Shown: piece after piece, positions 5,216-56,537 of the stretch
Layout of the letters: each line of letters begins with the position of its first letter
Position numbering within the stretch: the stretch's first letter is position 1
From: Macrostomum lignano
Lineage: Eukaryota
Length of the DNA stretch: 64,000 nucleotides
Reading direction: 5' to 3'
Assembly: GCA_002269645.1 (NCBI GenBank)
Contig: NIVC01000001.1
Span: 1,178,001 to 1,242,000 of the forward strand
Program-made: the position numbers and the translations under genes
The notes under the pieces: generated by a model
Told to the model about the DNA's origin: nothing
The model's database searches: none
The model's input: only the letters and a program-made list of their open reading frames with translations

Positions 5216-11237
<6,022 letters not shown>

Positions 11238-12861: not shown

Positions 12862-13515
12862 GCTAGATTAGCAATCCATTCTAGATTAGCAATCCCTTCT
12901 AGATTAGCAATCCATTCTAGATTAGCAATCCCTTCTAGATTAGCAATCCATTCTAGATTAGCAATCCATTCTAGATTAGCAATCCCTTCTAGATTAGCAA
13001 TCCATTCTAGATTAGCAATCCATTCTAGATTAGCAATCCCTTCTAGATTAGCAATCCATTCTAGATTAGCAATCCATTCTAGATTAGCAATCCCTTCTAG
13101 ATTAGCAATCCATTCTAGATTAGCAATCCCTTCTAGATTAGCAATCCATTCTAGATTAGCAATCCATTCTAGATTAGCAATCCCTTCTAGATTAGCAATC
13201 CATACTAGATTAGCAATCCATTCTAGATTAGCAATCCCTTCTAGATTAGCAATCCATTCTAGATTAGCAATCCCTTCTAGATTAGCAATCCATTCTAGAT
13301 TAGCAATCCATTCTAGATTAGCAATCCCTTCTAGATTAGCAATCCATTCTAGATTAGCAATCCCTTCTAGATTAGCAATCCATTCTAGATTAGCAATCCA
13401 TTCTATTCCTGCATTCTTGTGGGCTAGATTAGCAATCCATTCTATTCCTGCATTCTTGTGGGCTAGATTAGCAATCCATTCTATTCCTGCATTCTTGTGG
13501 GCTAGATTAGCAATT
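12862..13515. repeat. 18-bp satellite changing into the 39-bp satellite
   Basis: CTAGATTAGCAATCC(A/C)TT repeats. From about 13385 the unit gains CTATTCCTGCATTCTTGTGGG. Confidence 0.95.
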
Positions 13516-15121: not shown

Positions 15122-16381
15122 TTATACGGCGCTTTCGCAACGCCCTAACGACTGCAGTCTGATAACATTGGCGCCATGTCCTACAGCGTGCATTCGTCGC
15201 CTACCACCAACGCTGGCCGTGGCGCTAGCGGTGCCGCCGGTGACTCCACCGCCAGCGCCGCCGTTCACTCCTGCGCCTCCTTGGCAACGAAAGGTGCAGA
15301 TAATAATCTTGCGAAACTTCGGGCAGGACATGAAAAGATAGATCGGATTCACGGCGCAGTTGGACAGGGCTAGGCAGCTTATCGCGTCCTCAATCAGTAT
15401 AAACACGGAGGTGTCCACTCCGGTAGACAAGGCAGCCACCAGTCCGAACGATTCGCCATTAATAAGAGCCATTATGTTCCGAATCTGCATGGTCAGATGA
15501 TGCGGCAGCCAGGAGACGGCGAATATGCTAGCCATTGTGACGCCGAGGCGCATAATCTTCTTAGTGCGATTAACCGCCGCGTTGTTGTTAAACTGCACCA
15601 GCTGGGAGTTCACCTCACGTACAGTTCGGATTATCTTCGCGTAGCTATAGATTATTATGCTCAAGGGCAAGACGTACAGCAGCATAATGCTGACTGCATC
15701 ATACACTACGGCCATTAAGCGACTATTCATATTCTGCAGGCACATCTGCGTCAGCTGGGTAGCATTGGTGAGTGGCGCAAATGAGAATGACATTAGGCTG
15801 CTTACATCGGTAACGCGAGAGAACTTAGCTACAGGTGAGCCAAATGAGATTGCTACCAGCCAAACTACCAGAATCATCTTGCAGGAGGTTGTTCGCGAAG
15901 CCTTGCTGTTGCTGGCTAGTCGGTTTGCGCTGATACCGATGGAGCGCTCCAGAATCATTGCCGTGTGATTAAAAATGCTGGCCGCAGCTGTTGACACCAT
16001 GGCCGTTTCAACTAGTCGGCAGAGTCCTTCTCCCAGCGTCCAGTGGGTAGATACAATTTTCTGACTGGCTCCCGGTATGCAGATTGCAGTCATGAGCAGG
16101 TCCGTAAACACCAGGTTTAGTAGAAAGTATTTTTCAGAAACCCGATGCGATTTGAGTACAGCTAATAGAAGCAAACCGTTGCTAACCAGCGAGGTGGCGC
16201 CGATGACTGCGTATAGAACCAGCATCACGATGCGCCCCACCGAGATCTCTTGCACTGTGACAGTCTTGATGAAGGCCTCGACACGAAGACTGTCGTTAGC
16301 AGTCATGGTCATTAATAATTCTTCGACGCTAATCGACATGCTTGTGTGCGGTTTATTCAGTGCGGCTCGAGTAGTCAGCAT
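15122..16381 (-). CDS. Intronless rhodopsin-class (peptide-receptor-like) GPCR
   Basis: 419-aa ATG ORF with 7 hydrophobic segments: SN (TM1), LNLVFTDLL (TM2), WTLGEGLC, LERS (DRY site), W..P (TM4), YVLP (TM5), FAVSWLPHH (TM6), SNCAVNPIY (TM7). Confidence 0.92.
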   Translation of the reverse strand: MLTTRAALNKPHTSMSISVEELLMTMTANDSLRVEAFIKTVTVQEISVGRIVMLVLYAVIGATSLVSNGLLLLAVLKSHRVSEKYFLLNLVFTDLLMTAICIPGASQKIVSTHWTLGEGLCRLVETAMVSTAAASIFNHTAMILERSIGISANRLASNSKASRTTSCKMILVVWLVAISFGSPVAKFSRVTDVSSLMSFSFAPLTNATQLTQMCLQNMNSRLMAVVYDAVSIMLLYVLPLSIIIYSYAKIIRTVREVNSQLVQFNNNAAVNRTKKIMRLGVTMASIFAVSWLPHHLTMQIRNIMALINGESFGLVAALSTGVDTSVFILIEDAISCLALSNCAVNPIYLFMSCPKFRKIIICTFRCQGGAGVNGGAGGGVTGGTASATASVGGRRRMHAVGHGANVIRLQSLGRCESAV

Positions 16382-19431: not shown

Positions 19432-20560
19432 TGGGCTAGATTAGCAATCCATTCTATTCCTGCATCCTTGTGGGCTAGATTAGCAATCCATTCTATTCCT
19501 GCATCCTTGTGGGCTAGATTAGCAATCCATTCTATTCCTGCATCCTTGTGGGCTAGATTAGCAATCCATTCTATTCCTGCATCCTTGTGGGATAGATTAG
19601 CAATCCATTCTATTCTTGCATCCTTGTGGGCTAGATTAGCAATCCATTCTATTCTTGCATCATTGTGGGCTAGATTAGCAATCCATTCTATTCCTGCATC
19701 CTTGTGGGCTAGATTAGCAATCCATTCTATTCTTGCATCCTTGTGGGCTAGATTAGCAATCCATTCTATTCCTGCATCCTTGTGGGCTAGATTAGCAATC
19801 CATTCTATTCCTGCATCCTTGTGGGCTAGATTAGCAATCCATTCTATTCTTGCATCCTTGTGGGCTAGATTAGCAATCCATTCTATTCTTGCATCCTTGT
19901 GGGCTAGATTAGCAATCCATTCTATTCCTGCATCCTTGTGGGCTAGATTAGCAATCCATTCTATTCCTGCATCCTTGTGGGCTAGATTAGCAATCCATTC
20001 TATTCTTGCATCCTTGTGGGCTAGATTAGCAATCCATTCTATTCCTGCATCCTTGTGGGCTAGATTAGCAATCCATTCTATTCCTGCATCCTTGTGGGCT
20101 AGATTAGCAATCCATTCTATTCTTGCATCCTTGTGGGCTAGATTAGCAATCCATTCTATTCTTGCATCCTTGTGGGCTAGATTAGCAATCCATTCTATTC
20201 CTGCATCCTTGTGGGCTAGATTAGCAATCCATTGTATTCCTGCATCCTTGTGGGCTAGATTAGCAATCCATTCTATTCCTGTATCCTTGTGGGCTAGATT
20301 AGCAATCCACTCTATTCCTGCATCCTTGTGGGCTAGATTAGCAATCCATTCTATTCCTGCATCCTTGTGGGCTAGATTAGCAATCCATTCTATTCTTGCA
20401 TCCTTGTGGGCTAGATTAGCAATCCATTGTATTCCTGCATCCTTGTGGGCTAGATTAGCAATCCATTCTATTCTTGCATCCTTGTGGGCTAGATTAGCAA
20501 TCCATTCTATTCTTGCATCCTTGTGGGCTAGATTAGCAATCCATTCTATTCTTGCATCAT
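19432..20560. repeat. 39-bp satellite array just upstream of XPG
   Basis: Unit TGGGCTAGATTAGCAATCCATTCTATTCCTGCATCCTTG; explains ORF 19468..20571. Confidence 0.95.
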
Positions 20561-28171: not shown

Positions 28172-29478
28172 GCAGATTAGCAATCCACTCTATTCCTGCA
28201 TCCTTGTGGGCTAGATTAGCAATCCATTGTATTCCTGCATCCTTGTGGGCTAGATTAGCAATCCATTCTATTCCTGCATCCTCGTGGGCTAGATTAGAAA
28301 TCCATTATATTCCTGCATCCTTGTGGGCTAGATTAGCAATCCATTCTATTCCTGAATCCTTGTGGGCTAGATTAGCAATCCATTCTATTCCTGCATCTTT
28401 GTGGGCTAGATTAGCAATCCATTATATTCCTGCATCCTTGTGGGCTGGATTAGCAATCCATTCTATTCCTGCATCCTTGTGGGCTAGATTAGCAATCCAT
28501 TCTATTCCTGAATCCTTGTGGGCTAGATTAGCAATCCATTCTATTCCTGCATCCTTGTGGGCTAGATTAGCAATCCATTCTATTCCTGAATCCTTGTGGG
28601 CTAGATTAGCAATCCATTCTATTCCTGCATCCTTGTGGGCTAGATTAGCAATCCATTCTATTCCTGCATCCTTGTGGGCTAGATTAGCAATCCATTCTAT
28701 TCCTGCATCCTTGTGGGCTAGATTAGCAATCCATTATATTCCTGCATCCTTGTGGGCTAGATTAGCAATCCATTATATTCCTGCATCCTTGTGGGCTAGA
28801 TTAGCAATCCATTCTATTCCTGCATCCTTGTGGGCTAGATTAGCAATCCATTCTATTCCTGAATCCTTGTGGGCTAGATTAGCAATCCATTCTATTCCTG
28901 CATCCTTGTGGGCTAGATTAGCAATCCATTATATTCCTGCATCCTTGTGGGCTAGATTAGCAATCCATTCTATTCCTGCATCCTTGTGGGCTAGATTAGC
29001 AATCCATTCTATTCCTGAATCCTTGTGGGCTAGATTAGCAATCCATTCTATTCCTGCATCCTTGTGGGCTAGATTAGCAATCCATTCTATTCCTGCATCC
29101 TTGTGGGCTAGATTAGCAATCCATTCTATTCCTGCATCCTTGTGGGCTAGATTAGCAATCCATTCTATTCCTGAATCCTTGTGGGCTAGATTAGCAATCC
29201 ATTCTATTCCTGCATCCTTGTGGGCTAGATTAGCAATCCATTATATTCCTGCATCCTTGTGGGCTAGATTAGCAATCCATTCTATTCCTGCATCCTTGTG
29301 GGCTAGATTAGCAATCCATTATATTCCTGCATCCTTGTGGGCTAGATTAGCAATCCATTCTATTCCTGCATCCTTGTGGGCTAGATTAGCAATCCATTCT
29401 ATTCCTGCATCCTTGTGGGCTAGATTAGCAATCCATTCTATTCCTGCATCCTTGTGGGCTAGATTAGCAATCCATTAG
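28172..29478. repeat. 39-bp satellite array just downstream of XPG
   Basis: Same unit and orientation as 19432-20560. Confidence 0.95.
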
Positions 29479-33804: not shown

Positions 33805-36549
33805 CTGGAAATTAGCGATTGAAAATTTTAGATCATTCTATCCTGGTAATTTTTTAAACTATTTCCATTGGAACTACAAGCAAGAGGCTACCCTGTTATA
33901 ATCTACTTTGTATATTATAAAAGAGTAATAAGGCTTTTAGTTAGTTAAGTTTTTAGAGACAAAAAAACAATGTGTAATTTGGCCAAATGATGATAGCTAG
34001 CTAGGTTAAATTGTTATCAGATCCAAAGAGAACAACTCTGATATATATTTAAAATCTTATAAGTTATAACCCATATCTTTAAATGATCATATATCAATAC
34101 ATAATAGGCCAATATAAAAAGCAAAGTCATATATAAGAATGCAAAGTTATCATTTAAGATGAAAAATATTGCCACCAAAATTTGCATCAGTTAATACCAA
34201 CCTATAGCTTTTTGCCAAAATCAATGGTTGCTAGAATAGACATGATTATAACAAGCATAGGCATAGGTCTAGATATATACTCTTAAACTAAAGGGTTATA
34301 CCTATTTGTTGATATTTAATTTGTTAATAGGCCTAAAAATAAAATATAAGCAATTGGTAGAAGTCAAATTTGTCAATATAAAACTATTTGAACAAATTTG
34401 TCAACGAGGTAGACTTATTTAAAGTTATTTTTTAACTTATGCTAGTATTAATAAATTAATAGATGTTGATGAATTTGGTGGCACTTAGTGTTTGGAGCAA
34501 CATATAATGCAAATTTTTGTACCTACTGAACATTTTTATGCCTTAGTTTTTTAGAGGTTTATATGCAGCTATATTGCATGCATAACTAGATAAAAAAGCC
34601 ACCCATTTAATAATCTGCTTTCTATTTGCTATAACACTATAACATTTGCTATAACAACCACAAAAGAAGAGCAAAAACCAATTTTTCTTTCCATGAAATT
34701 TAAATTGGAATTTTTTGGTTGTTTTTTTGTTTTGGCTAGCTGTTTTATATTATTACATAAATGGTCACAAAGTAGAAACACAAGCTAGTTTAGTCATATC
34801 CTAACCCTAAAGCCTAAACAACATTCTAGAAAATTATTTGTTCTTTGAGGATTTTTGGCAGCTTGCTTACAAGAATCAAGGCAATATCCAAGCTAGCCAT
34901 TTTATCAGCTAATACATCTTCCATTTCAGCACTTCCTCAATAACTTGCTAGGCTTTTTCATCTCTTGCTTTTGAAAGTTTTTATGTTTTTTTACATATGG
35001 ATTTAATCTTTTTCTCATAGTTTTTAATGGCACCCAGTGGCTTTCAATGCACTATGACTAACGCTAAGCAGCAGCTGATTTGCTGACCCTTTCTCTTTTA
35101 GCTTTGTCTTCTCCTTCTCAACTAGCTTCTTTTTAAGACTAGGAATTTGTTTACACTTACAGTCTTGCTCTTCCACTTGAACTTCCAGAATGTTTTCAAT
35201 TTTCTAGCAAAATGGAAATTTGACTAGGCCTAATATTTTGTGCCACTCAGGGGTACAATAATTTATACCATTATTTTACATTTTGTGCATTTGCACCTGC
35301 TAGCACCAGATTTGTGCCTGGCAGAAATTTGTGCCTCACTCCAAATACTGGTCACAGTAAGTTGTAACAACATTGATGTCAACAAAAGATAGAAAGAGCA
35401 AAGGTGATAGTTTTGAGCTTTTTGGAAGAAAAGAAAACTTAAGGAATTGAGTATTTGGTATAGCTACATTTATTTACAGTAATGTATTATATATAACTGG
35501 AAAATTCTGGAAGTTTCATTAATTAAAACAAAGTGAATTGCATTCAATACTAATGTGTAATGTAATTTTACAATAAAAATACATTATTAAATTTGACTAG
35601 GCCTAGTACAAATTATGTATGACTATAGTCAGGATTTTAAAGTAAAATTAATATTTAATTAAATTAAAAGAAATTTATAGAATGAACTTTAACTTTGCAC
35701 TAAAAAGTATTTTCTAAAGATTCTATTCTAAAAATAAATCTAGTGTAGTGTACATGTGCTTTCTAAATTTGAATATGCTTTATACTACAATTTTGATAAT
35801 TTTGACTTTGATTGTTAAATATCCTAGGGACGTAAGCTTTCTAGAACCAAAAATGGTCAAGATTTTCATAATTCATAGTGAAACACAATACAAGTTTTGG
35901 AATTATTATTATTACATTAAATCATACAACACAAAATTAATTAAGTACTAACATGCGCAACTGCTGTAATGTAATTGTAGAGTAGTAGTAGTAAGTTTGG
36001 CTCAGGCAGGAAGCCTGTTTGGCCAGTATGAGTCAGTGTATTTAATAAAAATTCAAAAGTAGAAGGAAAACCAAGTGCATAAGTAGTTTTGCAATAATAT
36101 AGTATTTGAAAGAGCGCCTTAATTTTTCTATGAAACTTCGAATAATTTTTTGTAGATTTGTTTCCTATAAATTAGTTTGAACTTAACATTAAAATAAATA
36201 TTAATTCTAAGTCTACCTAAGTTTGTATAAGCACCTGTACTTCGTAAAAAATCTTTTTTAGTCATATAATTAAACTTTATAAGCTGTTATGTTTGCTGAT
36301 CGACATTTAGTATCAATAGTAAATTAAAAAATTCAAATCGACTCGACGAGGGAAGCTATATATATAGCTTTCAGACTGCTTTTTAAGAAGCTTCCTAGTT
36401 TTGCTCTTTATCTTTGACTTTGCCTTTGCCACTGTAAGGCTTTCCACACACACACACACAATTATAAATTAAGCATAAAAATCCAGACTATTGCATTAGA
36501 ACTAGCTATCATTGATTTTATCTTTTTCGTGAATAAAATCTTCTCAGCT

Positions 36550-37071
36550 ATGGATTCTTTATCGCTTCCAAGTGCTGTTCTTCACATAGTTAAAGCACTC
36601 GGTCTTCAGCCATTACCAATGGAAGGAGGATTCTATAAGGAAATGTTCCGAAGCCATAATACTGTGTCTTTCGCTGATTCTCTCCATGCTACAAGCACAA
36701 ACATCTACTATCTAATAACCAGCTCGCAATTTAGCCGTTGGCACAAGCTGCTTCAGGACGAAACCTGGTCCTATCTTGGAGGCACTTCAACAGCTACAAT
36801 GGATTTGATTTCACCTGATGGAAACCATAGTCAGGTCTTTTTTGGTGAATTGAATCGAGTGGCTCACAACAGCAGCAGCACACGGCAGCACACTCTATGC
36901 TTTACTGTGCCTGCAAAAACTTGGTTTACTGTACATTGTGATTCTACTGCTGAAGACACCTATGCACTCTTTTCGTGTGTTTGTGCACCTGGTTTTGAGT
37001 TCTCAGATGCTGAGTACTCTGACTCAGCTGCTTTGAGTAGAATTTTTCCAAACTGCAATGATATTTGTTAA
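36550..37071 (+). CDS. Intronless cupin_5/DUF985 (YML079W-like) protein
   Basis: LGLQPLPMEGGFYKEMFRS, STNIYYLI, FSRWHKL..DETW, FTVPAKTWF, YALFSCVCAPGFEFSD. ATG at 36550. Confidence 0.85.
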   Translation: MDSLSLPSAVLHIVKALGLQPLPMEGGFYKEMFRSHNTVSFADSLHATSTNIYYLITSSQFSRWHKLLQDETWSYLGGTSTATMDLISPDGNHSQVFFGELNRVAHNSSSTRQHTLCFTVPAKTWFTVHCDSTAEDTYALFSCVCAPGFEFSDAEYSDSAALSRIFPNCNDIC

Positions 37072-41465: not shown

Positions 41466-46341
<4,876 letters not shown>

Positions 46342-49819: not shown

Positions 49820-50568
49820 GATTCGAAAATTCGGCTCTAAGTTACTCAACGATAGCCCCTTGTTACTCACTGATTCACTAAGTTACTCAATGATCTCCAA
49901 AAGTTACTCAATGATGATCCCCAAGTTACGAGTACTCATTATTTGATTCACAGAGCTACTCCGATCACTGATTCCCTATAAGTTACTTAATGATTCCCAG
50001 ATTTATTTAGTATCTAAGAACTGCCTTAGATGTAGACGTGTAGTTTTGTCACTCATTTTTGAATTTCTTGGGAAACCATCGGAGTTACTTGGGAACTCAT
50101 TGAATAACTTTGGTAATTATTGATCGTAACTTGCGGAATCATTGAGTAACTTTGGAAATCATTGAGTAACTTTGGAAATCATTGAGTAACTTTGGGAATC
50201 ATTGAGTAACTTTGGGAAAAATTGAGTAACTTTGGGAAAAATTGAGTAACTTGCGGAATTATTGAGTAACTTGCAGAATCATTAAGTAACTAACTTGCGG
50301 AATCATTAAGTAACTTGCGGAATCATTAAGTAACTTGCGGAATCATTAAGTAACTTGCGGAATCATTAAGTAACTTGCGGAATCATTAAGTAACTTGCGG
50401 AATCATTGAGTAACTTGCGGAATCATTAAGTAACTAACTTGCGGAATCATTAAGTAACTTGCGGAATCATTGAGTAACTTGCGGAATCATTGAGTAACTA
50501 AGGAAATCATAGGAGAATTGAACAAACTCACAAAAATACCAACTGCAGGAAATTTCCGATTTCGAATC
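49820..50568. mobile_element. Foldback-like element with inverted arrays of ~20-bp subrepeats
   Basis: Ends GATTCGAAAATTCGG and CCGATTTCGAATC. The left arm has AAGTTACTCAAT repeats; the right arm has ATTGAGTAACTT repeats. Confidence 0.6.
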
Positions 50569-51419
50569 TGCGTCACTCGGCATGGAAAATTCCGTGAACT
50601 AATTAGCTAATCAAAGGCAGTTGCCAGCAGGCGATGAGCAAGTCAATTATTTAAGACAGCGACGACTCAATAAAAAATTCTTCTGAACAACCGAAAAACT
50701 GCGAATATTGCAGGCATCTCCTGGGAGCAGATTAATCTGGAGGCGGGTGCCAAACAGATAACAGGGCCGACCCTCATTAGCAATTTATTGGATTGACAGT
50801 GGCGGCTCGCTCACGGCAGCTCAAAATTATGGCAAAAATTTTAATGAAATTTTAATGACTGACAAGTCGCCACGGGATCGCTGGGCGTTTCGTGCCGCCT
50901 CATTTTTCTTTGGGCCTGATCGCCATTTTAATCTGGTCGATCTGCTGACGCAAATCGAGCAGCGGGTCGTCGCGGGGTGCCGGTCTCGCCCCATGGCTGC
51001 AGGTTGCAGATATCCGGAATTGTCGCCGTGGGACCTCCGCGCTCAGGCAACCCACCGCCCCTGGGGCCCGGCGCCAGGGACCTCTTGAAAGCTTGAAATT
51101 TGGAAACGAAACTCAAGCAGGGGATTGACGGGGGTTCTGTTGGCATGCAAAAATGCTTAATACCCGAAAAATTGTAACTTATTACCTCAGCAATGGTTAC
51201 AAGTAGCCCCTCCCTGACTCACGCTGTCCCGCTGTAGCATATAAATCAAGCACTTGTCATCGGTGACTCATTTGAGCGTGAATGAATTTAAAAAAGAATG
51301 GAAATGCCACACAATTGTAGTCACTTCATCAGGGGCGTCGCCAGGATCATTGAAGGAGCTTTTTTTCATAGGCGTTTTTTAACTTGGCAATTTTTTATCT
51401 CACTCGGCGCCAACTTTTG

Positions 51420-51790
51420 TTTGACTGGGCGCCACTTTTTTATTTGACTGGGCGCCACATTTTTAGTTGATTGGGCGCCATTAGAGCTGACTGGGCGCCA
51501 TTAGAGCTGACTGGGCGCCAGTATAGCTGACTGGGCGCCAGTATAGCTGCCTGGGCCCCAGTATAGCTGCTTGGGCGTCAGTATTGCTGCCTGGGCGCCA
51601 GTATTGCTGCCTGGGCGCCAGTATTGCTGTTGTGGGCGCCAGTATAGCTGCCTGGGCGCCAGTATAGCTGCCTGGGCGCCAGTATAGCTGCCTGGGCCCC
51701 AGTATAGCTGCTTGGGCGCCAGTATAGCTTCCTGGGCGCCAGTATAGCTGCCTGGGCGCCAGCAGTATAGCTGACTGGGCGCCAGTAAGA
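51420..51790. repeat. 20-bp minisatellite
   Basis: CTGGGCGCCAGTATAGCTGC. Confidence 0.88.
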
Positions 51791-52239
51791 GGCTCCCCAA
51801 GTGCATTCCTCAATGCAGCTGTTCCTATCGAGTTAGCAACAATAGCCATATGCTTCGCATCATCACTGACGGTGTAGTGTTGAGTCTGATCATTTCTTGC
51901 TTTTTCTATGCTCGGTTTCTGCAAACTGCGGTATTTTGAATTAAATTAATAAGTCTCAGCTGCATATTAGTGAGGGCAAGCAAGGGGCATTGCCATTGAC
52001 TCTGTGGAAGGGTGGTGTTTAGCAACAAAAACCATGGTTTTTTAAGTAAAACTTTTCACGTATTTATATGCACTACGAGATTTTCGATAACCAGTTTAGC
52101 CACTAAATATGAGAATACGATGCACAGGTAACATTGAGGCAAGTAGGAAAAATAAAACTTTCTGCTGATCATTGTTACATTTGGAGGTTAAACCAGGTGG
52201 AGGGACAACCAGTTTATTGCAGGGAGGCAATTACCAGTT

Positions 52240-52660
52240 AGGGGGGCAAACCACTTGGGGATAAACCAGTTGGGGGGACACTAGTTGGGGGGAATTAGTT
52301 GGGGGACAGGTGGAGGGCAAACAGGGACGAAGCAGGTGGGGGACAAAGCAGGTGGGGGACAAAGCAGGTGGGGGACAAAGCAGGTGGGGGACAAACCAGG
52401 TGGGGGACAAACCAGGTGGGGGACAAAGCAGGTGGGGGACAAAGCAGGTGGGGGACAAAGCAGGTGGGGGACAAACCAGGTGGGGGACAAAGCAGGTGGG
52501 GGACAAAGCAGGTGGGGGACAAAGCAGGTGGGGGACAAAGCAGGTGGGGGACAAAGCAGGTGGGGGACAAAGCAGGTGGGGGACAAAGCAGGTGGGGGAC
52601 AAACCAGGTGGGGGACAAACCAGGTGGGGGACAAACCAGGTGGGGACAAAACAGGTGGAG
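52240..52660. repeat. 16-bp G-run minisatellite
   Basis: AGCAGGTGGGGGACAA. Confidence 0.9.
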
Positions 52661-52833: not shown

Positions 52834-52839
52834 TATAAA
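52834..52839 (+). promoter_or_regulatory. Candidate TATA box of the neuropeptide gene
   Basis: TATAAA in GC-rich context, 115 nt upstream of ATG 52949. Confidence 0.5.
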
Positions 52840-52948
52840 TGCGCCCAACGCTGGCAGGCAGTTCGGTCGCGTCCCAGCCATCGAAGTCTCCCGCACAGCT
52901 CCCGATCAGCAATCAAATCCAGTCAAATCAACTCAGAGCTCAACAACA

Positions 52949-53720
52949 ATGCGCGTCGGAGTCATCGGTCTCGTCCTCTGCGCCGTGCTGGTGCTGATGC
53001 AGTGCGCCTTCGCCCAGCAGTTCCACTTTAGCCACGGAGTTAACGGTAACTGCAATTCATATAATGGCCGTTTGTTACATTAAACTTGCTGATTGAATGG
53101 GCTTTCACAGTTTTCATTTACCACAAACAAATACATAAAATAAAATATCCACAATGAATTGCTACCATTTCAGGAGTTAACGGTAAAACTTCTCAGTTAA
53201 TTACCTCTACATTTACTTGTACAATGTACATGTACCGATTATTATTTGCTTTGGCAACAAATCACTCGCTTGTATTGCCGCTGTGCCTTATAACTAACAA
53301 TCACTAATTTGATTGAGTACATATAGCCCTACTCAAGTTACGTGCGACAACTAATTGTACTTCAATGTAACGTCGCAGGTTGGAAGCCCGGCAAGCGCGG
53401 CCTGGCCGAGGAGGGCCACGCTGGCCATCAGATCTTCCGGCTGAAGAAAGGCTACCACTTCTTCCGGCTGAAGAAGGACCAGGAGTGCGCCATCGGCGAG
53501 GAGGCCCGGGCGCTGCTGGCCGATATTGTGGTCAGTTTTTGGCTTCTGTTAAAAAACGCGCATCAATACCAGCAAACTATAAAACCAGCAAACTCTACTA
53601 TAAGTAGAAAAATACGAATATTTGTATTTTTTCTCTCCGTTTGTACAGAAATCTGCCCAGAGCGGCTCGCTGTGCCCGGCAGACAGGCAGGTGATTTCCG
53701 CGTTCGTGCAGAACCTCTGA
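52949..53720 (+). CDS. GnRH/corazonin-like neuropeptide precursor with extra xxFRL peptides
   Basis: Exons 52949-53045, optional 53174-53182, 53379-53530, 53649-53720. Signal peptide MRVGVIGLVLCAVLVLMQCAFA, then QQFHFSHGVN(GVN)GWKP-GKR, GLAEEGHAGHQIFRL-KK, GYHFFRL-KK and a tail with two Cys. Confidence 0.88.
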
Positions 53721-53964: not shown

Positions 53965-54420
53965 AGTGGAGTGCCACTGATGGGGGAGAGAGGAGACTGG
54001 GGAGGCAGAGTGACACTGATGGGGGAGAGAGGAGACTGGGGAGGCAGAGTGACACTGATGGGAGAGAGAGGAGACTGTGAGACAATGTAGAGTGCCACTG
54101 ATGGGGGAGAGAGGAGACTGGGGAGGCAGAGTGATACTGATGGGGAAGAGAGGAGACTGGGGAGGCAGAGTGATACTGATGGGGAAGAGAGGAGACTGGG
54201 GAGGCAGAGTGATACTGATGGGGAAGAGAGGAGACTGGGGAGGCAGAGTGACACTGATGGGGAAGAGAGGAGACTGGGGAGGCAGAGTGACACTGATGGG
54301 GAAGAGAGGAGACTGTGACATAGAGTGACACTGATGGGGAAGAGAGGAGACTGGGGAGGCAGAGTGACACTGATGGGGAAGAGAGGAGACTGGGGAGGCA
54401 GAGTGGAACAGATGGGGAAG
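53965..54420. repeat. 39-bp purine-rich minisatellite
   Basis: GAGTGACACTGATGGGGAAGAGAGGAGACTGGGGAGGCA. Confidence 0.9.
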
Positions 54421-54764
54421 CTGAGAAGAGATCGAGGATACTGATGTAGAGGATACATATAATGTAAAAAAGCAGCAAAGCAATGAGACACGGTAAGATT
54501 GCAACATATATTACAGACGATAAACTTTATGTTAAAATTGTACCGTTTGAAATGAGGATTTGCGCGCGGCACAAAGGTGTGCATCAGCAAAGTATGATTA
54601 TTATTATTAACAATATTTTCGTAAAATAAAATGCAACACTTGCATTGCACTGCGCATACAGAGGCATTGTGAACCGAACCAATTTGCGCAGAAATTTTAT
54701 AAGCAAAAATACCAACAAGGTTTACACTCTTATGGACCAATTTATGTCGATGTGCAAAACCCGC

Positions 54765-55243
54765 CTAACAGGTGGGATAATAATCCTCAATGGGATAGCC
54801 CATATTCTAACAGGTGGGATAATAATCCTCAATGGGATAGCCCATATTCTAACAGGTGGGATAATAATCCTCAATGGGATCACACTTGTCTAAACAGATG
54901 GGATAATAATCCTCAATGGGATCACACTTGTCTAAACAGATGGGATAATAATCCTCAATGGGATCACACTTGTCTAAACAGATGGGATAATAATCCTCAA
55001 TGGGATCACACTTGTCTAAACAGATGGGATAATAATCCTCAATGGGATCACACTTGTCTAAACAGATGGGATAATAATCCTCAATGGGATCACACTTGTC
55101 TAAACAGATGGGATAATAATCCTCAATGGGATCACACTTGTCTAAACAGATGGGATAATAATCCTCAATGGGATCACACTTGTCTAAACAGATGGGATAA
55201 TAATCCTCAATGGGATCACACTTGTCTAAACAGATGGGATAAT
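54765..55243. repeat. 42-bp minisatellite, array 1
   Basis: AATCCTCAATGGGATCACACTTGTCTAAACAGATGGGATAAT. Confidence 0.92.
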
Positions 55244-55292
55244 GAAAGATTATTAAACGCCTATTTTGTGTAGAAATCATGAGACAATAATA

Positions 55293-55403
55293 TTGTGTCT
55301 ATGGTTTTAGGCCCTGATAATGCTCAAATGACACTCGTGACTTTGCTCCTGCTTCGCCACTCGTGACTTTGAGCATTATCAAAGCCTAAAACCATAGACA
55401 CAA
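55293..55403. mobile_element. 111-bp palindromic MITE-like hairpin
   Basis: TTGTGTCTATGGTTTTAGGC..TGATAATGCTCAAA pairs with TTTGAGCATTATCA..GCCTAAAACCATAGACACAA. Confidence 0.6.
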
Positions 55404-55927
55404 CTAACCATTATCAAACGGTTGATAATGCATGACTAAATTTAGATACCGTCTATGGTAATTCGTCAGAAACTTTGGTCTTAAATGTTCTAAGTTACAG
55501 CGAAGACTTCTCAGTTTTTCATTTTAAGCCGTCTTCGCTTGCCTGCCTTAAACATGACCGCTACGCATCTTATCAATTGGTCTCATCTGCCGGTTGATAG
55601 TCTCGATGGCGTTTCATCCAGCGAATACATCGTCAAGCACGATGGACGTGAGTAACCAGAACATTACACTCAGTAGGCAGAACGTCTCAACTATCTTCAC
55701 GGATTGTCATTTCTCTGGCTGCACTTTCAACTTGAATGGTTAGAGACATCTGCGTCATTGAGAATTGCAACTATAAACAACTAAAAACTGTAAACTGTTC
55801 ATTGCTTAACCATTGAAGCTGAAAAATAAACTCGCAGTTCCACCATAGTCTATGGTAGATGTTGAAAAGTTGGCGTTTGATAATCACAAAATTACACAAC
55901 GAGAAATAATAAGAGAAAGAATGTGAC

Positions 55928-56537
55928 AATAATCCTCAATGGGATCACACTTGTCTAAACAGATGGGATAATAATCCTCAATGGGATCACACTTGTCTAA
56001 ACAGATGGGATAATAATCCTCAATGGGATCACACTTAATCTAACAGGTGCGATAATAATCCTCAATGGGATCACACTTGTCTAAACAGGTGGGATAATAA
56101 TCCTCAATGGGATCACATTTAATCTAACAGGTGCGATAATAATCCTCAATGGGATCACACTTGTCTAAACAGGTGGGATAATAATCCTCAATGGGATCAC
56201 ATTTAATCTAACAGGTGCGATAATAATCCTCAATGGGATCACACTTGTCTAAACAGGTGGGATAATAATCCTCAATGGGATCACACTAGTCTAAACAGAT
56301 GGGATAATAATCCTCAATGGGATCACACTAGTCTAAACAGATGGGATAATAATCCTCAATGGGATTACACTTGTCTGAACAGGTGGGATAATAATCCTCA
56401 ATGGGATTACACTTGTCTGAACAGGTGGGATAACAATCCTCAATGGGATTACACTTGTCTGAACAGGTGGGATAACAATCCTCAATGGGATTACACTTAA
56501 TCTAACAGGTGGGATAATAATCCTCAATGGGATCATA
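55928..56537. repeat. 42-bp minisatellite, array 2
   Basis: Same unit and orientation as 54765-55243. Confidence 0.92.

What the first reader, a model, noticed from the sequence alone, without database searches (positions are those of the whole stretch)
52949..53720. GnRH/corazonin-like prohormone whose mature peptide length may be toggled by a 9-nt microexon
Seen: exon 1 ends CACG-GAGTTAACG|GTAACT. An identical 9-mer GAGTTAACG sits in the intron at 53174-53182 between TTTCAG and GTAAAA, forming a perfect in-frame microexon. Skipping gives pQQFHFSHGVNGWKP-amide; inclusion gives pQQFHFSHGVNGVNGWKP-amide. Established: molluscan GnRH/corazonin-type peptides read pQNYHFSNGW(HPG)amide, so even the short form carries a 3-residue insertion in the conserved core. 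Inference: microexon duplication has produced alternative splicing inside a mature neuropeptide, which could tune receptor selectivity.
Basis: partly seen in the sequence, partly recalled or inferred. Interest (0 to 1): 0.75.

Follow-up and report, generated by a model that had tools for sequence, protein, structure and literature searches.

The report
Microexon inside a flatworm corazonin/GnRH-type neuropeptide
This is the corazonin/GnRH-type neuropeptide gene of the flatworm Macrostomum lignano; a 9-base mini-exon that adds Val-Asn-Gly to the middle of the hormone appears in RNA-based gene models of sister copies, and this copy carries a second copy of it fused to exon 1, but no data show it making the doubly extended peptide.

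Summary
The window is Macrostomum lignano, gene Mlig008027g1 (PAA94807.1, annotated 'hypothetical protein'). It is a three-exon prohormone related to Schmidtea grh-1 and Stylochoplana GnRH-2 (E 5e-10 and 1.6e-11), a type now classed as corazonin-type.

The decisive evidence comes from three near-identical sister loci (g2, g4, g6).
- Their exon 1 ends CACG|gtaact, without the 9-mer.
- All keep the intronic cassette tttcag|GAGTTAACG|gtaaaa.
- The RNA-guided models of g2 and g4 include it (HGVNGWKPG); a partial g6 model skips it, giving the canonical HGWKPG.

So the microexon is probably real, and VNG is a Macrostomum-specific insert. The intronic cassette is shared by all copies, and the exon-1 copy is special to this homeologue. 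This copy therefore cannot make the canonical 11-mer. It makes the 14-mer, or the 17-mer if the cassette is still spliced in. No VNGVNG product exists in any database searched, and RNA reads could not be examined. Receptor tuning is untested.

Verdict: a new variant of a known kind, moderately interesting, resolvable from public RNA-seq.

The parts
52834..52840 (+). TATAAAT box upstream of the annotated 5' end; identical in all four copies
   Evidence: invariant columns of alignment A1
52949..53014 (+). Signal peptide MRVGVIGLVLCAVLVLMQCAFA. Predicted cleavage is AFA|Q by the -3/-1 rule, so the Gln that would become pyroglutamate is the first residue of the propeptide
   Evidence: inference from the von Heijne rule and from orthologues whose peptide also starts directly after the signal sequence
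53015..53036 (+). Exon-1 part of the mature peptide, QQFHFSH plus the first base of a Gly codon; identical in all four copies
53037..53045 (+). 9-nt extension GAGTTAACG fused to the end of exon 1. It is present only in this homeologue and encodes (G)VN(G); it makes VNG constitutive here and removes the ability to make the canonical peptide
   Evidence: (9-column gap in g2/g4/g6)
53046..53173 (+). Intron 1a (128 nt; 83 nt in the sister loci). Donor ACG|GTAACT, acceptor ctaccatttcAG. TGC at -14, 63-nt AG-exclusion zone. Stem arms 53045-53060 and 53154-53166
53174..53182 (+). 9-nt cassette microexon GAGTTAACG, phase 1 on both sides, donor ACG|GTAAAA. It lies in the longest perfectly conserved intronic block (53151-53197, 47 nt)
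   Evidence: the inclusion models P0003/P0002 and the skip model P0004 at sister loci
53183..53378 (+). Intron 1b (196 nt); CTAAT branch-point-like motif at -28 of the exon 2 acceptor
53379..53530 (+). Exon 2: (G)WKP, then G (amide donor), KR (dibasic cleavage site), then the associated peptide with HQIFRLKKGYHFFRLKK and the first Cys
53531..53648 (+). Intron 2 (GTCAGT...TGTACAG), phase 0
53649..53720 (+). Exon 3: C-terminal part of the associated peptide with the second Cys; stop TGA at 53718-53720
   Evidence: the reconstructed protein equals PAA94807.1 from its Met onward

Best explanation
The locus is one homeologue (Mlig008027g1) of the corazonin/GnRH-type prohormone gene of Macrostomum lignano. 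A signal peptide is followed directly by one copy of the peptide, then Gly-Lys-Arg (amidation and cleavage), then a Cys-containing associated peptide. The first intron is phase 1 and splits the Gly codon of the conserved Gly-Trp pair. Inside that intron lies a 9-nt cassette exon (GAGTTAACG). When spliced in, it inserts Val-Asn-Gly and regenerates a Gly on each side, so pQQFHFSHG and GWKP-amide stay intact and only the spacer between them lengthens.

In the three sister copies, exon 1 lacks the 9-mer. There the cassette decides between the canonical 11-mer pQQFHFSHGWKP-amide and the 14-mer pQQFHFSHGVNGWKP-amide. In the window copy a second copy of the cassette has been fixed onto the end of exon 1. 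The most likely route is templating from the cassette, either from a spliced transcript or by template switching through the shared ACGGTAA. VNG is therefore constitutive in this copy. The canonical peptide cannot be made here, because CACG|GAGT is not a donor. The retained intronic cassette would give a 17-mer (VNGVNG) if it is still recognised.

Shown: the sequence anatomy, the homology, and the difference between loci. Shown indirectly, through published RNA-guided gene models: inclusion and skipping at the sister loci. Inferred: the direction and mechanism of the 9-nt transfer, peptide processing, and any use of the cassette in this copy.
For: - Identity and family. The 100% hit is PAA94807.1 of M. 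lignano. HMMER against 1.84 billion representatives finds only flatworm relatives: Stylochoplana GnRH-2 (1.6e-11), Schmidtea grh-1 (5e-10), Schmidtea spp-19, and three M. lignano spp-19-like families.
- Peptide similarity. The skip form matches Capitella pQAYHFSHGWFPa at 8 of 11 residues and the molluscan pQNYHFSNGW... series. Tian et al. list the Lottia peptide of this series as CRZ-type. Thiel et al. report that the Platynereis peptides first named GnRH-1 and GnRH-2 were renamed corazonin-1 and -2.
- The cassette. Alignment A1 shows that exon 1 of g2/g4/g6 ends CACG|GTAACT with no 9-mer, while the cassette and its AG/GT flanks are identical in all four loci. Exact reconstruction shows P0003 and P0002 equal exon 1 + cassette + exon 2, P0004 equals exon 1 + exon 2, and P0001 equals the window's extended exon 1 + exon 2.
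- Provenance of the models. They come from BLAT-mapped de novo transcripts (1% near-best filter) plus STAR/StringTie/TACO.
- Conservation. The cassette lies in the longest perfectly conserved intronic run between the homeologues: 47 nt, against about 10% mismatch elsewhere in introns 1a and 1b.
- The 14-nt repeat is non-random.
- The orthologues have no insert.
- Pfam. Only the skip isoform gives even sub-threshold AKH/GnRH hits; the VNG form gives none.
Against: - No RNA reads could be inspected; all splicing evidence is second-hand from one annotation.
- The g6 skip model is partial, ending inside exon 2. It could come from reads aligned across the junction with the 9 nt treated as an insertion.
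- The g2/g4 inclusion models could in principle be a g1-derived transcript cross-mapped onto near-identical paralogues.
- No VNGVNG protein is on record. TACO's isoform-frac of 0.75 makes that absence weak evidence.
- Without an outgroup, the direction (gain in g1 or loss in g2/g4/g6) is not settled.
- Part of the 'perfect microexon' look follows automatically if the repeat arose as a duplication spanning the donor site, because the GTAA comes along with it.
- The 47-nt conserved block is only slightly longer than other intronic runs of 35-42 nt.
Confidence: 0.65

Rival explanations
1. The intronic 9-mer is never spliced. It is an inert by-product of a duplication that spanned the exon-1 donor, such as a target-site-like duplication around an inserted segment. 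On this view the window copy makes only the 14-mer, the sister copies make only the canonical 11-mer, and the g2/g4 'inclusion' models are mapping artefacts of g1 transcripts.
For: - Direct repeats flank intron 1a: 7 nt (ACGGTAA) in the sister loci and 14 nt here.
- A repeat that includes ACG|GTAA supplies the downstream donor automatically, so only the upstream AG needs explaining.
- Intron 1a folds as a hairpin with inverted-repeat-like ends in the sister loci: z = -2.97, with 2 of 200 shuffles folding as well. That would fit an inserted element.
- The transcripts of all copies cluster at 95% or more, and multimapping was allowed.
Against: - The BLAT filter kept only alignments within 1% of the best. 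g1 and g2 transcripts differ by about 2.7% in the 5' flank/UTR and about 5% plus indels in the 3' UTR, so a g1 transcript should not have been retained at g2/g4.
- The acceptor context (TGC at -14, ccatttcag, 63-73-nt AG-exclusion zone) is at least as good as that of constitutive exon 2.
- The cassette sits in the longest conserved intronic block.
- No other copy of intron 1a was found in the 64 kb plus 28 kb available, so a mobile-element origin is unsupported.
- If g1 were ancestral, the sister copies would have had to restore the exact canonical HGW by a precise 9-nt deletion.
Confidence: 0.2
2. One reading: in this copy the cassette is alternatively included. One gene then toggles between a 14-mer (VNG) and a 17-mer (VNGVNG), and the two forms differ in receptor selectivity.
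For: - The cassette and 47 nt around it are identical to those of the sister loci, where inclusion is annotated. The same signals are therefore present here.
- The intron-1a stem that pairs the donor region with the region just upstream of the cassette acceptor is kept, with an A-U pair here where the sister loci have G·U.
- Polyclad flatworms are reported to have one GnRH-type and three corazonin-type receptors, so several receptors may be available for several ligands.
- The starfish corazonin-type ligand HNTFTMGGQNRWKAG-NH2 shows that a longer spacer before Trp is compatible with receptor activation in this family.
Against: - No VNGVNG product exists in the annotation or in the 15-billion-protein collection.
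- The only model for this locus skips the cassette.
- Intron 1a here carries a 45-nt insert, and its fold is no better than shuffled sequence (z = -0.15).
- There are no receptor or peptide data of any kind.
Confidence: 0.15
3. The 9-nt extension of exon 1 in the window is an assembly or polishing artefact, and this copy is really like its sister copies.
For: The assembly is PacBio-based, highly redundant and repeat-rich. One sister locus (g4) already shows a 1-nt homopolymer difference that shifts the reading frame.
Against: - Long-read errors are mostly single-base indels, not an exact in-frame 9-nt copy placed precisely at an exon-intron boundary.
- The window locus is otherwise a coherent, roughly 10%-diverged homeologue with its own substitutions and indels throughout.
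- Its annotated protein agrees with the extended exon.
Confidence: 0.05

Closest known systems
Flatworm GnRH/corazonin-type prohormones: Schmidtea mediterranea grh-1 (ADC84439.1) and Stylochoplana pusilla GnRH-2 (BCO16381.1)
   Same: - Signal peptide followed directly by Q-x-x-H-F-S-x-(G/D)-W-x-P-G-K-R.
- The same associated peptide with HQ(I/M)FRLKKG(Y/F)H(F/Y)FRLKK and two Cys.
- About 100 aa in length.
- Significant homology, E 5e-10 and 1.6e-11.
   Different: Neither orthologue has residues between Gly/Asp and Trp. The M. lignano gene adds VNG through a 9-nt cassette, and in this copy through a fused exon-1 extension. The gene structures of the orthologues could not be examined.
Lophotrochozoan 'invertebrate GnRH' peptides, now classed as corazonin-type (octopus pQNYHFSNGWHPGa, Capitella pQAYHFSHGWFPa, Lottia pQHYHFSNGWKSa)
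   Same: The skip form pQQFHFSHGWKPa has the same length and core. It matches the Capitella peptide at 8 of 11 residues. Nomenclature is covered.
   Different: The products this window can encode carry one or two VNG units inside the core. No receptor pairing is known for M. lignano.
Starfish corazonin-type peptide ArCRZ, HNTFTMGGQNRWKAG-NH2 (Tian et al. 2016)
   Same: An amidated 15-mer with a longer spacer between the N-terminal F-T/S motif and the Trp-Lys pair (...GGQNRWKAG against ...HGVNGWKP-G). It is a proven ligand of a corazonin-type receptor.
   Different: The longer spacer in the starfish peptide is encoded constitutively. It is a deuterostome lineage, so the resemblance in length is an analogy and not homology of the insert.
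des-Gln14-ghrelin
   Same: A precedent for alternative splicing that changes the length of a mature peptide hormone from within. [quoted passage not shown]
   Different: That case is a splice-site shift removing a single residue. It is not a free-standing cassette microexon, and the family and phylum differ.
Neuronal microexon programme (SRRM3/4, eMIC domain)
   Same: A 3-27-nt in-frame cassette in a gene expressed in neurons. UGC lies close to the 3' splice site (here at -14), and the AG-exclusion zone is long, at 63-73 nt. These cues are described for eMIC targets.
   Different: Known targets are mostly intracellular proteins, not the bioactive core of a secreted peptide. The cues here are short and could be chance. 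The presence and role of an eMIC factor in M. lignano were not tested.

Membership tests
Corazonin/GnRH-type prohormone (lophotrochozoan 'invGnRH' / CRZ-type) | Significant sequence homology of the whole precursor to named members | tested here: met
   E 1.6e-11 to Stylochoplana GnRH-2 and 5e-10 to Schmidtea grh-1, in a library of 1.84 billion proteins
Corazonin/GnRH-type prohormone (lophotrochozoan 'invGnRH' / CRZ-type) | A single peptide copy directly after the signal peptide, starting with Gln (pyroglutamate) | tested here: met
   ...QCAFA|QQFHF...; -3/-1 rule; same position as in the orthologues. No dedicated signal-peptide predictor was available.
Corazonin/GnRH-type prohormone (lophotrochozoan 'invGnRH' / CRZ-type) | Contiguous core x-[FY]-H-[FY]-S-x-G-W in a peptide of 11-12 residues | tested here: not met
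   Met only by the skip isoform of the sister loci (QQFHFSHGWKP). Every product the window copy can encode has VNG or VNGVNG between G and W. The family homology stands, but the peptide is an atypical member.
Corazonin/GnRH-type prohormone (lophotrochozoan 'invGnRH' / CRZ-type) | C-terminal Gly plus a dibasic site, for amidation and cleavage | tested here: met
   P-G-K-R at 53387-53398, aligned with PGKR of both orthologues. Actual processing is not testable here.
Corazonin/GnRH-type prohormone (lophotrochozoan 'invGnRH' / CRZ-type) | Curated Pfam models GnRH (PF00446) and Adipokin_hormo (PF06377) | tested here: inconclusive
   The skip isoform gives E 0.11 and 0.04, below the curated cut-offs. 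The VNG isoform gives no hit. The named flatworm GnRH-2 is equally sub-threshold.
Corazonin/GnRH-type prohormone (lophotrochozoan 'invGnRH' / CRZ-type) | Activation of a corazonin-type or GnRH-type receptor | not testable with these tools
   Needs synthetic peptides and expressed receptors
Alternatively spliced cassette microexon | AG...GT flanks, length a multiple of 3, reading frame kept | tested here: met
   tttcag|GAGTTAACG|gtaaaa; phase 1 on both sides; Gly regenerated on each side
Alternatively spliced cassette microexon | Transcript evidence for inclusion | tested here: met
   Indirect. The RNA-guided models PAA68647.1 (g2) and PAA46590.1 (g4) can only be built by including the cassette. 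No reads were inspected.
Alternatively spliced cassette microexon | Transcript evidence for skipping from the same kind of locus | tested here: inconclusive
   One partial model, PAA82237.1 (g6), skips it. An alignment artefact cannot be excluded.
Alternatively spliced cassette microexon | Use of the cassette in the window copy itself (VNGVNG mRNA) | not testable with these tools
   No such protein in the collection.
eMIC/SRRM-dependent neuronal microexon | UGC near the 3' splice site, long AG-exclusion zone, dependence on an eMIC factor | tested here: inconclusive
   TGC at -14 and an AG-exclusion zone of 63 nt (73 nt in g2) are present, but they are weak cues. The regulator was not examined.

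The most novel reading that the evidence does not exclude
A Macrostomum-specific 9-nt microexon sits inside the receptor-binding core of a corazonin/GnRH-type neuropeptide. Together with a homeologue that has hard-wired one copy of it, it would give one animal a graded series of ligands of 11, 14 and 17 residues. The termini would be identical and the Val-Asn-Gly spacers would differ. Splicing and gene copy would both set which ligand is made, and the ligands would be read differently by the several corazonin/GnRH-type receptors that flatworms possess.
Probability: 0.15. Interest if true: 0.8.

Novelty: new variant of a known kind. Interest (0 to 1): 0.55.

Why it matters
Diversity in small amidated neuropeptides is normally attributed to gene duplication, multi-copy precursors or alternative large exons. 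A cassette microexon that lengthens the core of an 11-residue hormone while keeping both termini would be a different route to ligand diversity. I found no described case in the literature I could search; the nearest precedent I found is des-Gln14-ghrelin.

The recent genome duplication of M. lignano adds a natural experiment. One homeologue still depends on splicing for the insert, and the other has fixed it in exon 1. Comparing the two would show how an alternative microexon becomes constitutive.

The system is testable. M. lignano has public RNA-seq, transgenesis and RNAi. The three predicted peptides differ by 270.13 Da each.

The gene is also currently labelled 'hypothetical protein', so the analysis supplies a missing annotation for a flatworm model organism.

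Tried and rejected
- Canonical peptide from the window copy. I looked for another donor. Joining CACG to GTTGG would need a GA-AG intron, and GGA|GTTAAC is out of frame with the only acceptor. Rejected.
- VNGVNG isoform. The homology search returned one cluster of four NCBI proteins, none with VNGVNG.
- Literature. The strings QFHFSHG and HFSHGW found no mention of the M. lignano peptide; HFSHGW retrieved only two reviews listing the Capitella peptide. Searches for Macrostomum neuropeptide, GnRH or prohormone papers found nothing on this gene. A combined search for microexon, neuropeptide, mature peptide and alternative splicing gave 0 papers.
- Mobile-element origin of intron 1a. There is no second copy in the window or in the three loci. 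The TIR/TSD reading stays speculative.
- RNA structure as evidence of function. The intron-1a hairpin is significant in the sister loci (z = -2.97) but not in the window copy (z = -0.15), and only two lineages are available, so covariation cannot be tested.
- Intron number as a GnRH-versus-corazonin criterion. The main text and the supplement of Tian et al. contradict each other, so it was not used.
- Rfam and tRNA scans of the window found nothing.
- Outgroup sequences from other Macrostomum species were not present in any collection available.

Full report
**1. The observation**

- The ORF starts at ATG 52949.
- Exon 1 ends ...TTTAGCCACG-GAGTTAACG|GTAACT at 53045.
- The same 9-mer lies at 53174-53182 between ...ctaccatttcag and gtaaaac.
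- Exon 2 starts at 53379 (cgcag|GTTGGAAGCCCGGCAAGCGC) and ends at 53530 (|GTCAGT).
- Exon 3 is 53649-53720.

The 9-mer occurs nowhere else on either strand of the window. The identity runs for 14 nt (GGAGTTAACGGTAA), which gives 2 matches where 0.02 are expected by chance. Skipping the cassette yields a 106-aa protein with QQFHFSHGVNGWKPGKR. Inclusion yields a 109-aa protein with QQFHFSHGVNGVNGWKPGKR. The repeat is real.

**2. What the gene is**

The spliced protein is 100% identical to PAA94807.1, 'hypothetical protein BOX15_Mlig008027g1' of Macrostomum lignano, on the 2.68-Mb scaffold of assembly GCA_002269645.1. An exhaustive HMMER search of 1.84 billion representatives found only seven proteins, all from flatworms.
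- Stylochoplana pusilla 'gonadotropin-releasing hormone-2' (QNMHFSNGWQPGKR; E 1.6e-11).
- Schmidtea mediterranea 'GnRH-like-1', grh-1 (QSYHFSNDWLPGKR; E 5e-10). Collins et al. detected grh-1 mRNA in restricted CNS cell populations.
- Schmidtea spp-19.
- Three M. lignano spp-19-like families that keep the associated peptide but lack the N-terminal peptide.

All share HQIFRLKKGYHFFRLKK and two Cys (alignment A2). The peptide without VNG, pQQFHFSHGWKP-amide, matches Capitella pQAYHFSHGWFPa at 8 of 11 residues and fits the molluscan pQNYHFSNGW... series. Peptides of this series were first named GnRH. Current nomenclature treats them as corazonin-type: Tian et al. list the Lottia peptide as CRZ, and Thiel et al. 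report the renaming of the Platynereis peptides. A 2026 review states that GnRH/corazonin peptides and receptors exist in polyclad flatworms. I found no paper that describes the M. lignano gene. Pfam gives only sub-threshold AKH/GnRH hits, and only for the form without VNG.

**3. The sister loci change the picture**

The 90% cluster holds three more annotated proteins. g2 and g4 read HGVNGWKPG. g6 reads HGWKPG, with no insert. I fetched their loci and aligned them with the window.
- In all three sister loci, exon 1 ends AGCCACG|GTAACTGCAG. The 9-mer is absent from exon 1.
- The intronic cassette tttcag|GAGTTAACG|gtaaaa is present and identical in all four loci.

Exact reconstruction shows how each annotated protein is built.

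| Locus | Protein | Construction | Peptide core |
|---|---|---|---|
| g2 | P0003 | exon 1 + cassette + exon 2 + exon 3 | HGVNGWKPG |
| g4 | P0002 | exon 1 + cassette + exon 2 | HGVNGWKPG |
| g6 | P0004 | exon 1 + exon 2, cassette skipped; partial model ending inside exon 2 | HGWKPG |
| g1 (window) | P0001 | extended exon 1 + exon 2 + exon 3, cassette skipped | HGVNGWKPG |

g2, g4 and g6 are 99.5-99.8% identical to one another. They are recent copies, which fits the extra large chromosomes of the DV1 line. The window locus is collinear with them but only about 87-90% identical in flanks and introns, so it is a diverged homeologue.

**4. How good the splicing evidence is**

The GenBank annotation was built in several steps.
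- De novo transcripts were mapped with BLAT, keeping only alignments within 1% of the best.
- RNA-seq was mapped with STAR and assembled with StringTie.
- The results were merged with TACO at isoform-frac 0.75, which keeps roughly one isoform per locus.

Three consequences follow.
- The inclusion models at g2 and g4 rest on RNA that contained the 9 nt. A g1 transcript differs from g2 by about 2.7% in the 5' flank/UTR and about 5% plus indels in the 3' UTR, so it should have failed the 1% filter. Cross-mapping still cannot be excluded without reads.
- The skip model at g6 is partial and could be an alignment artefact.
- The absence of a VNGVNG model for the window locus says little.

Independent sequence cues are modest.
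- The cassette lies in the longest perfectly conserved intronic run between the homeologues: 47 nt (53151-53197), against about 10% mismatch in introns 1a and 1b. Other runs reach 35-42 nt.
- Its acceptor (aattgctaccatttcag) is at least as pyrimidine-rich as that of constitutive exon 2 (gtaacgtcgcag).
- A TGC sits at -14, and the AG-exclusion zone is 63 nt here and 73 nt in g2. These features are described for eMIC-dependent neuronal microexons. Each is weak on its own.

My estimates are as follows.

| Claim | Probability |
|---|---|
| The cassette is truly spliced in at the sister loci | about 0.8 |
| Both inclusion and skipping occur | about 0.6 |
| The window copy produces appreciable VNGVNG mRNA | about 0.35 |

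**5. Mechanism**

The first intron is phase 1 and splits the Gly codon before Trp (G|GT). The cassette reads G|GA GTT AAC G|GT. It inserts Val-Asn-Gly and regenerates Gly on both sides. The N-terminal pQQFHFSHG and the C-terminal GWKP-amide are kept in every isoform, and only the spacer grows.

The sister copies can therefore give the canonical 11-mer or a 14-mer. The window copy has the cassette sequence fixed at the end of exon 1. It cannot give the 11-mer, because CACG|GAGT is not a donor. It gives the 14-mer when the cassette is skipped and a 17-mer when it is included.

Processing is inferred from three things: the AFA|Q signal-peptide cleavage, the G-K-R motif, and alignment with the orthologues. 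The starfish corazonin-type ligand HNTFTMGGQNRWKAG-NH2 shows that a longer spacer before Trp can be compatible with receptor activation in this family. That is an analogy only.

**6. Origin of the two copies (inference)**

In the sister loci a 7-nt direct repeat, ACGGTAA, brackets intron 1a plus the first 6 nt of the cassette. This looks like an insertion at the old donor site that duplicated the donor. On that reading the ancestral gene was CACG|GTAAAAC... and encoded the canonical peptide, as the orthologues do.

The window's extra 9 nt can be produced from the cassette in two ways.
- From a spliced transcript. Exon 1 gives full homology on the left, and ACGGT gives microhomology on the right.
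- By two template switches within the locus, through GG and then ACGGTAA.

The opposite polarity would have the 14-nt repeat ancestral and a 9-nt deletion in the sister lineage. That requires an unexplained earlier VNG insertion, followed by a deletion that restores exactly the canonical core. I consider it less parsimonious, but only an outgroup can decide. No other copy of intron 1a was found, so a transposon origin is unsupported.

**7. Comparison with known systems and novelty**

The family is known in flatworms, so membership by homology is clear. The contiguous-core criterion is not met by any product of this window copy. Alternative splicing that changes the length of a mature peptide hormone from within has a precedent in des-Gln14-ghrelin. 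A free-standing 9-nt cassette inside the core of a corazonin/GnRH-type peptide, together with a homeologue that has fixed it, was not found in the literature I could search. I file it as a new variant of a known kind.

**8. Verdict**

The family is right and the microexon is probably real. The direction of duplication is probably reversed. The annotated toggle is 11-mer versus 14-mer in the sister copies. VNGVNG and receptor tuning are unsupported.
- The question can be settled from existing public RNA-seq with three diagnostic strings, and by peptidomics at [M+H]+ 1380.660, 1650.792 and 1920.925.
- Interest is 0.55.

Noticed in passing
window 53427-53477 (exon 2); P0005-P0010: The associated-peptide motif HQIFRLKKGYHFFRLKK, bounded by dibasic sites, is conserved across all flatworm relatives. 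That includes Schmidtea spp-19 and three M. lignano families that lack the N-terminal corazonin/GnRH-type peptide altogether. It may be a second bioactive product or a sorting or structural element.
   Followed up: partly
window 52949-53720 vs L002 5136-5865: Between the homeologues the CDS has 1 synonymous difference in about 73 synonymous sites, against about 10% mismatch in introns 1a and 1b (P about 0.004). GC3 is 0.87 and intron 1 GC is 0.35. This points to strong codon constraint or exon-limited gene conversion; conversion would fit a transcript-templated origin of the 9-nt extension.
   Followed up: partly
L002 5223-5300 (intron 1a of sister loci); window 53045-53060 with 53154-53166: Intron 1a of the sister loci folds into a hairpin: z = -2.97, with 2 of 200 shuffles folding as well. 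It pairs the exon-1 donor region (GGUA...GCAGUUCAU) with AUGAAUUGCUACC just upstream of the cassette acceptor. The stem is kept in the window copy, with A-U where the sister loci have G·U, but the fold is not significant there because of a 45-nt insert.
   Followed up: partly
L003 about 1760-1770 (exon 2 of g4): The g4 copy has a 1-nt shorter C run (GAGG-CCGGG) that shifts the frame and truncates the annotated protein (...EEAGRCWPIL). It is either a pseudogenising mutation or an assembly error. The partial g6 model ends at the homologous position.
   Followed up: no
L001 5997-9689: The g6 locus carries about 3.7 kb just downstream of the gene that is absent from the otherwise 99.8%-identical g2 locus.
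   Followed up: no
window 15122-16381 (-): Uninterrupted 419-aa ORF for a rhodopsin-family GPCR (7tm_1, E 3.5e-34). The best solved-structure matches are galanin receptor 1 and NPY Y2 (E 4.5e-22, 2.5e-20). It is a peptide receptor gene about 37 kb from the prohormone gene, and it is not GnRH-receptor-like.
   Followed up: partly
window 6139-7386 (+) and 10296-11237 (+): ORFs with a RUN domain (E 2.3e-13) and a Rubicon homology domain (E 6e-39). They are probably exons of one Rubicon/PLEKHM-like gene, separated by a 1.5-kb (TCTG)n array at 8661-10227.
   Followed up: no
window 36529-37071 (+); 45392-45895 (-): A Cupin_5/DUF985 ORF (E 1e-30) and a protein-kinase domain fragment (E 4.2e-30). These are further genes in the window.
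   Followed up: no
window 13385-13514, 19432-20558, 28174-29476: The same 39-nt minisatellite unit (...AGATTAGCAATCCATTCTATTCCTGCATCCTTGTGGGCT...) forms three separate arrays. TRF returned 52 high-scoring rows for the window overall, including arrays on both sides of the prohormone gene (50082-52658 and 53969-56535). This fits the repeat-rich M. lignano genome.
   Followed up: no
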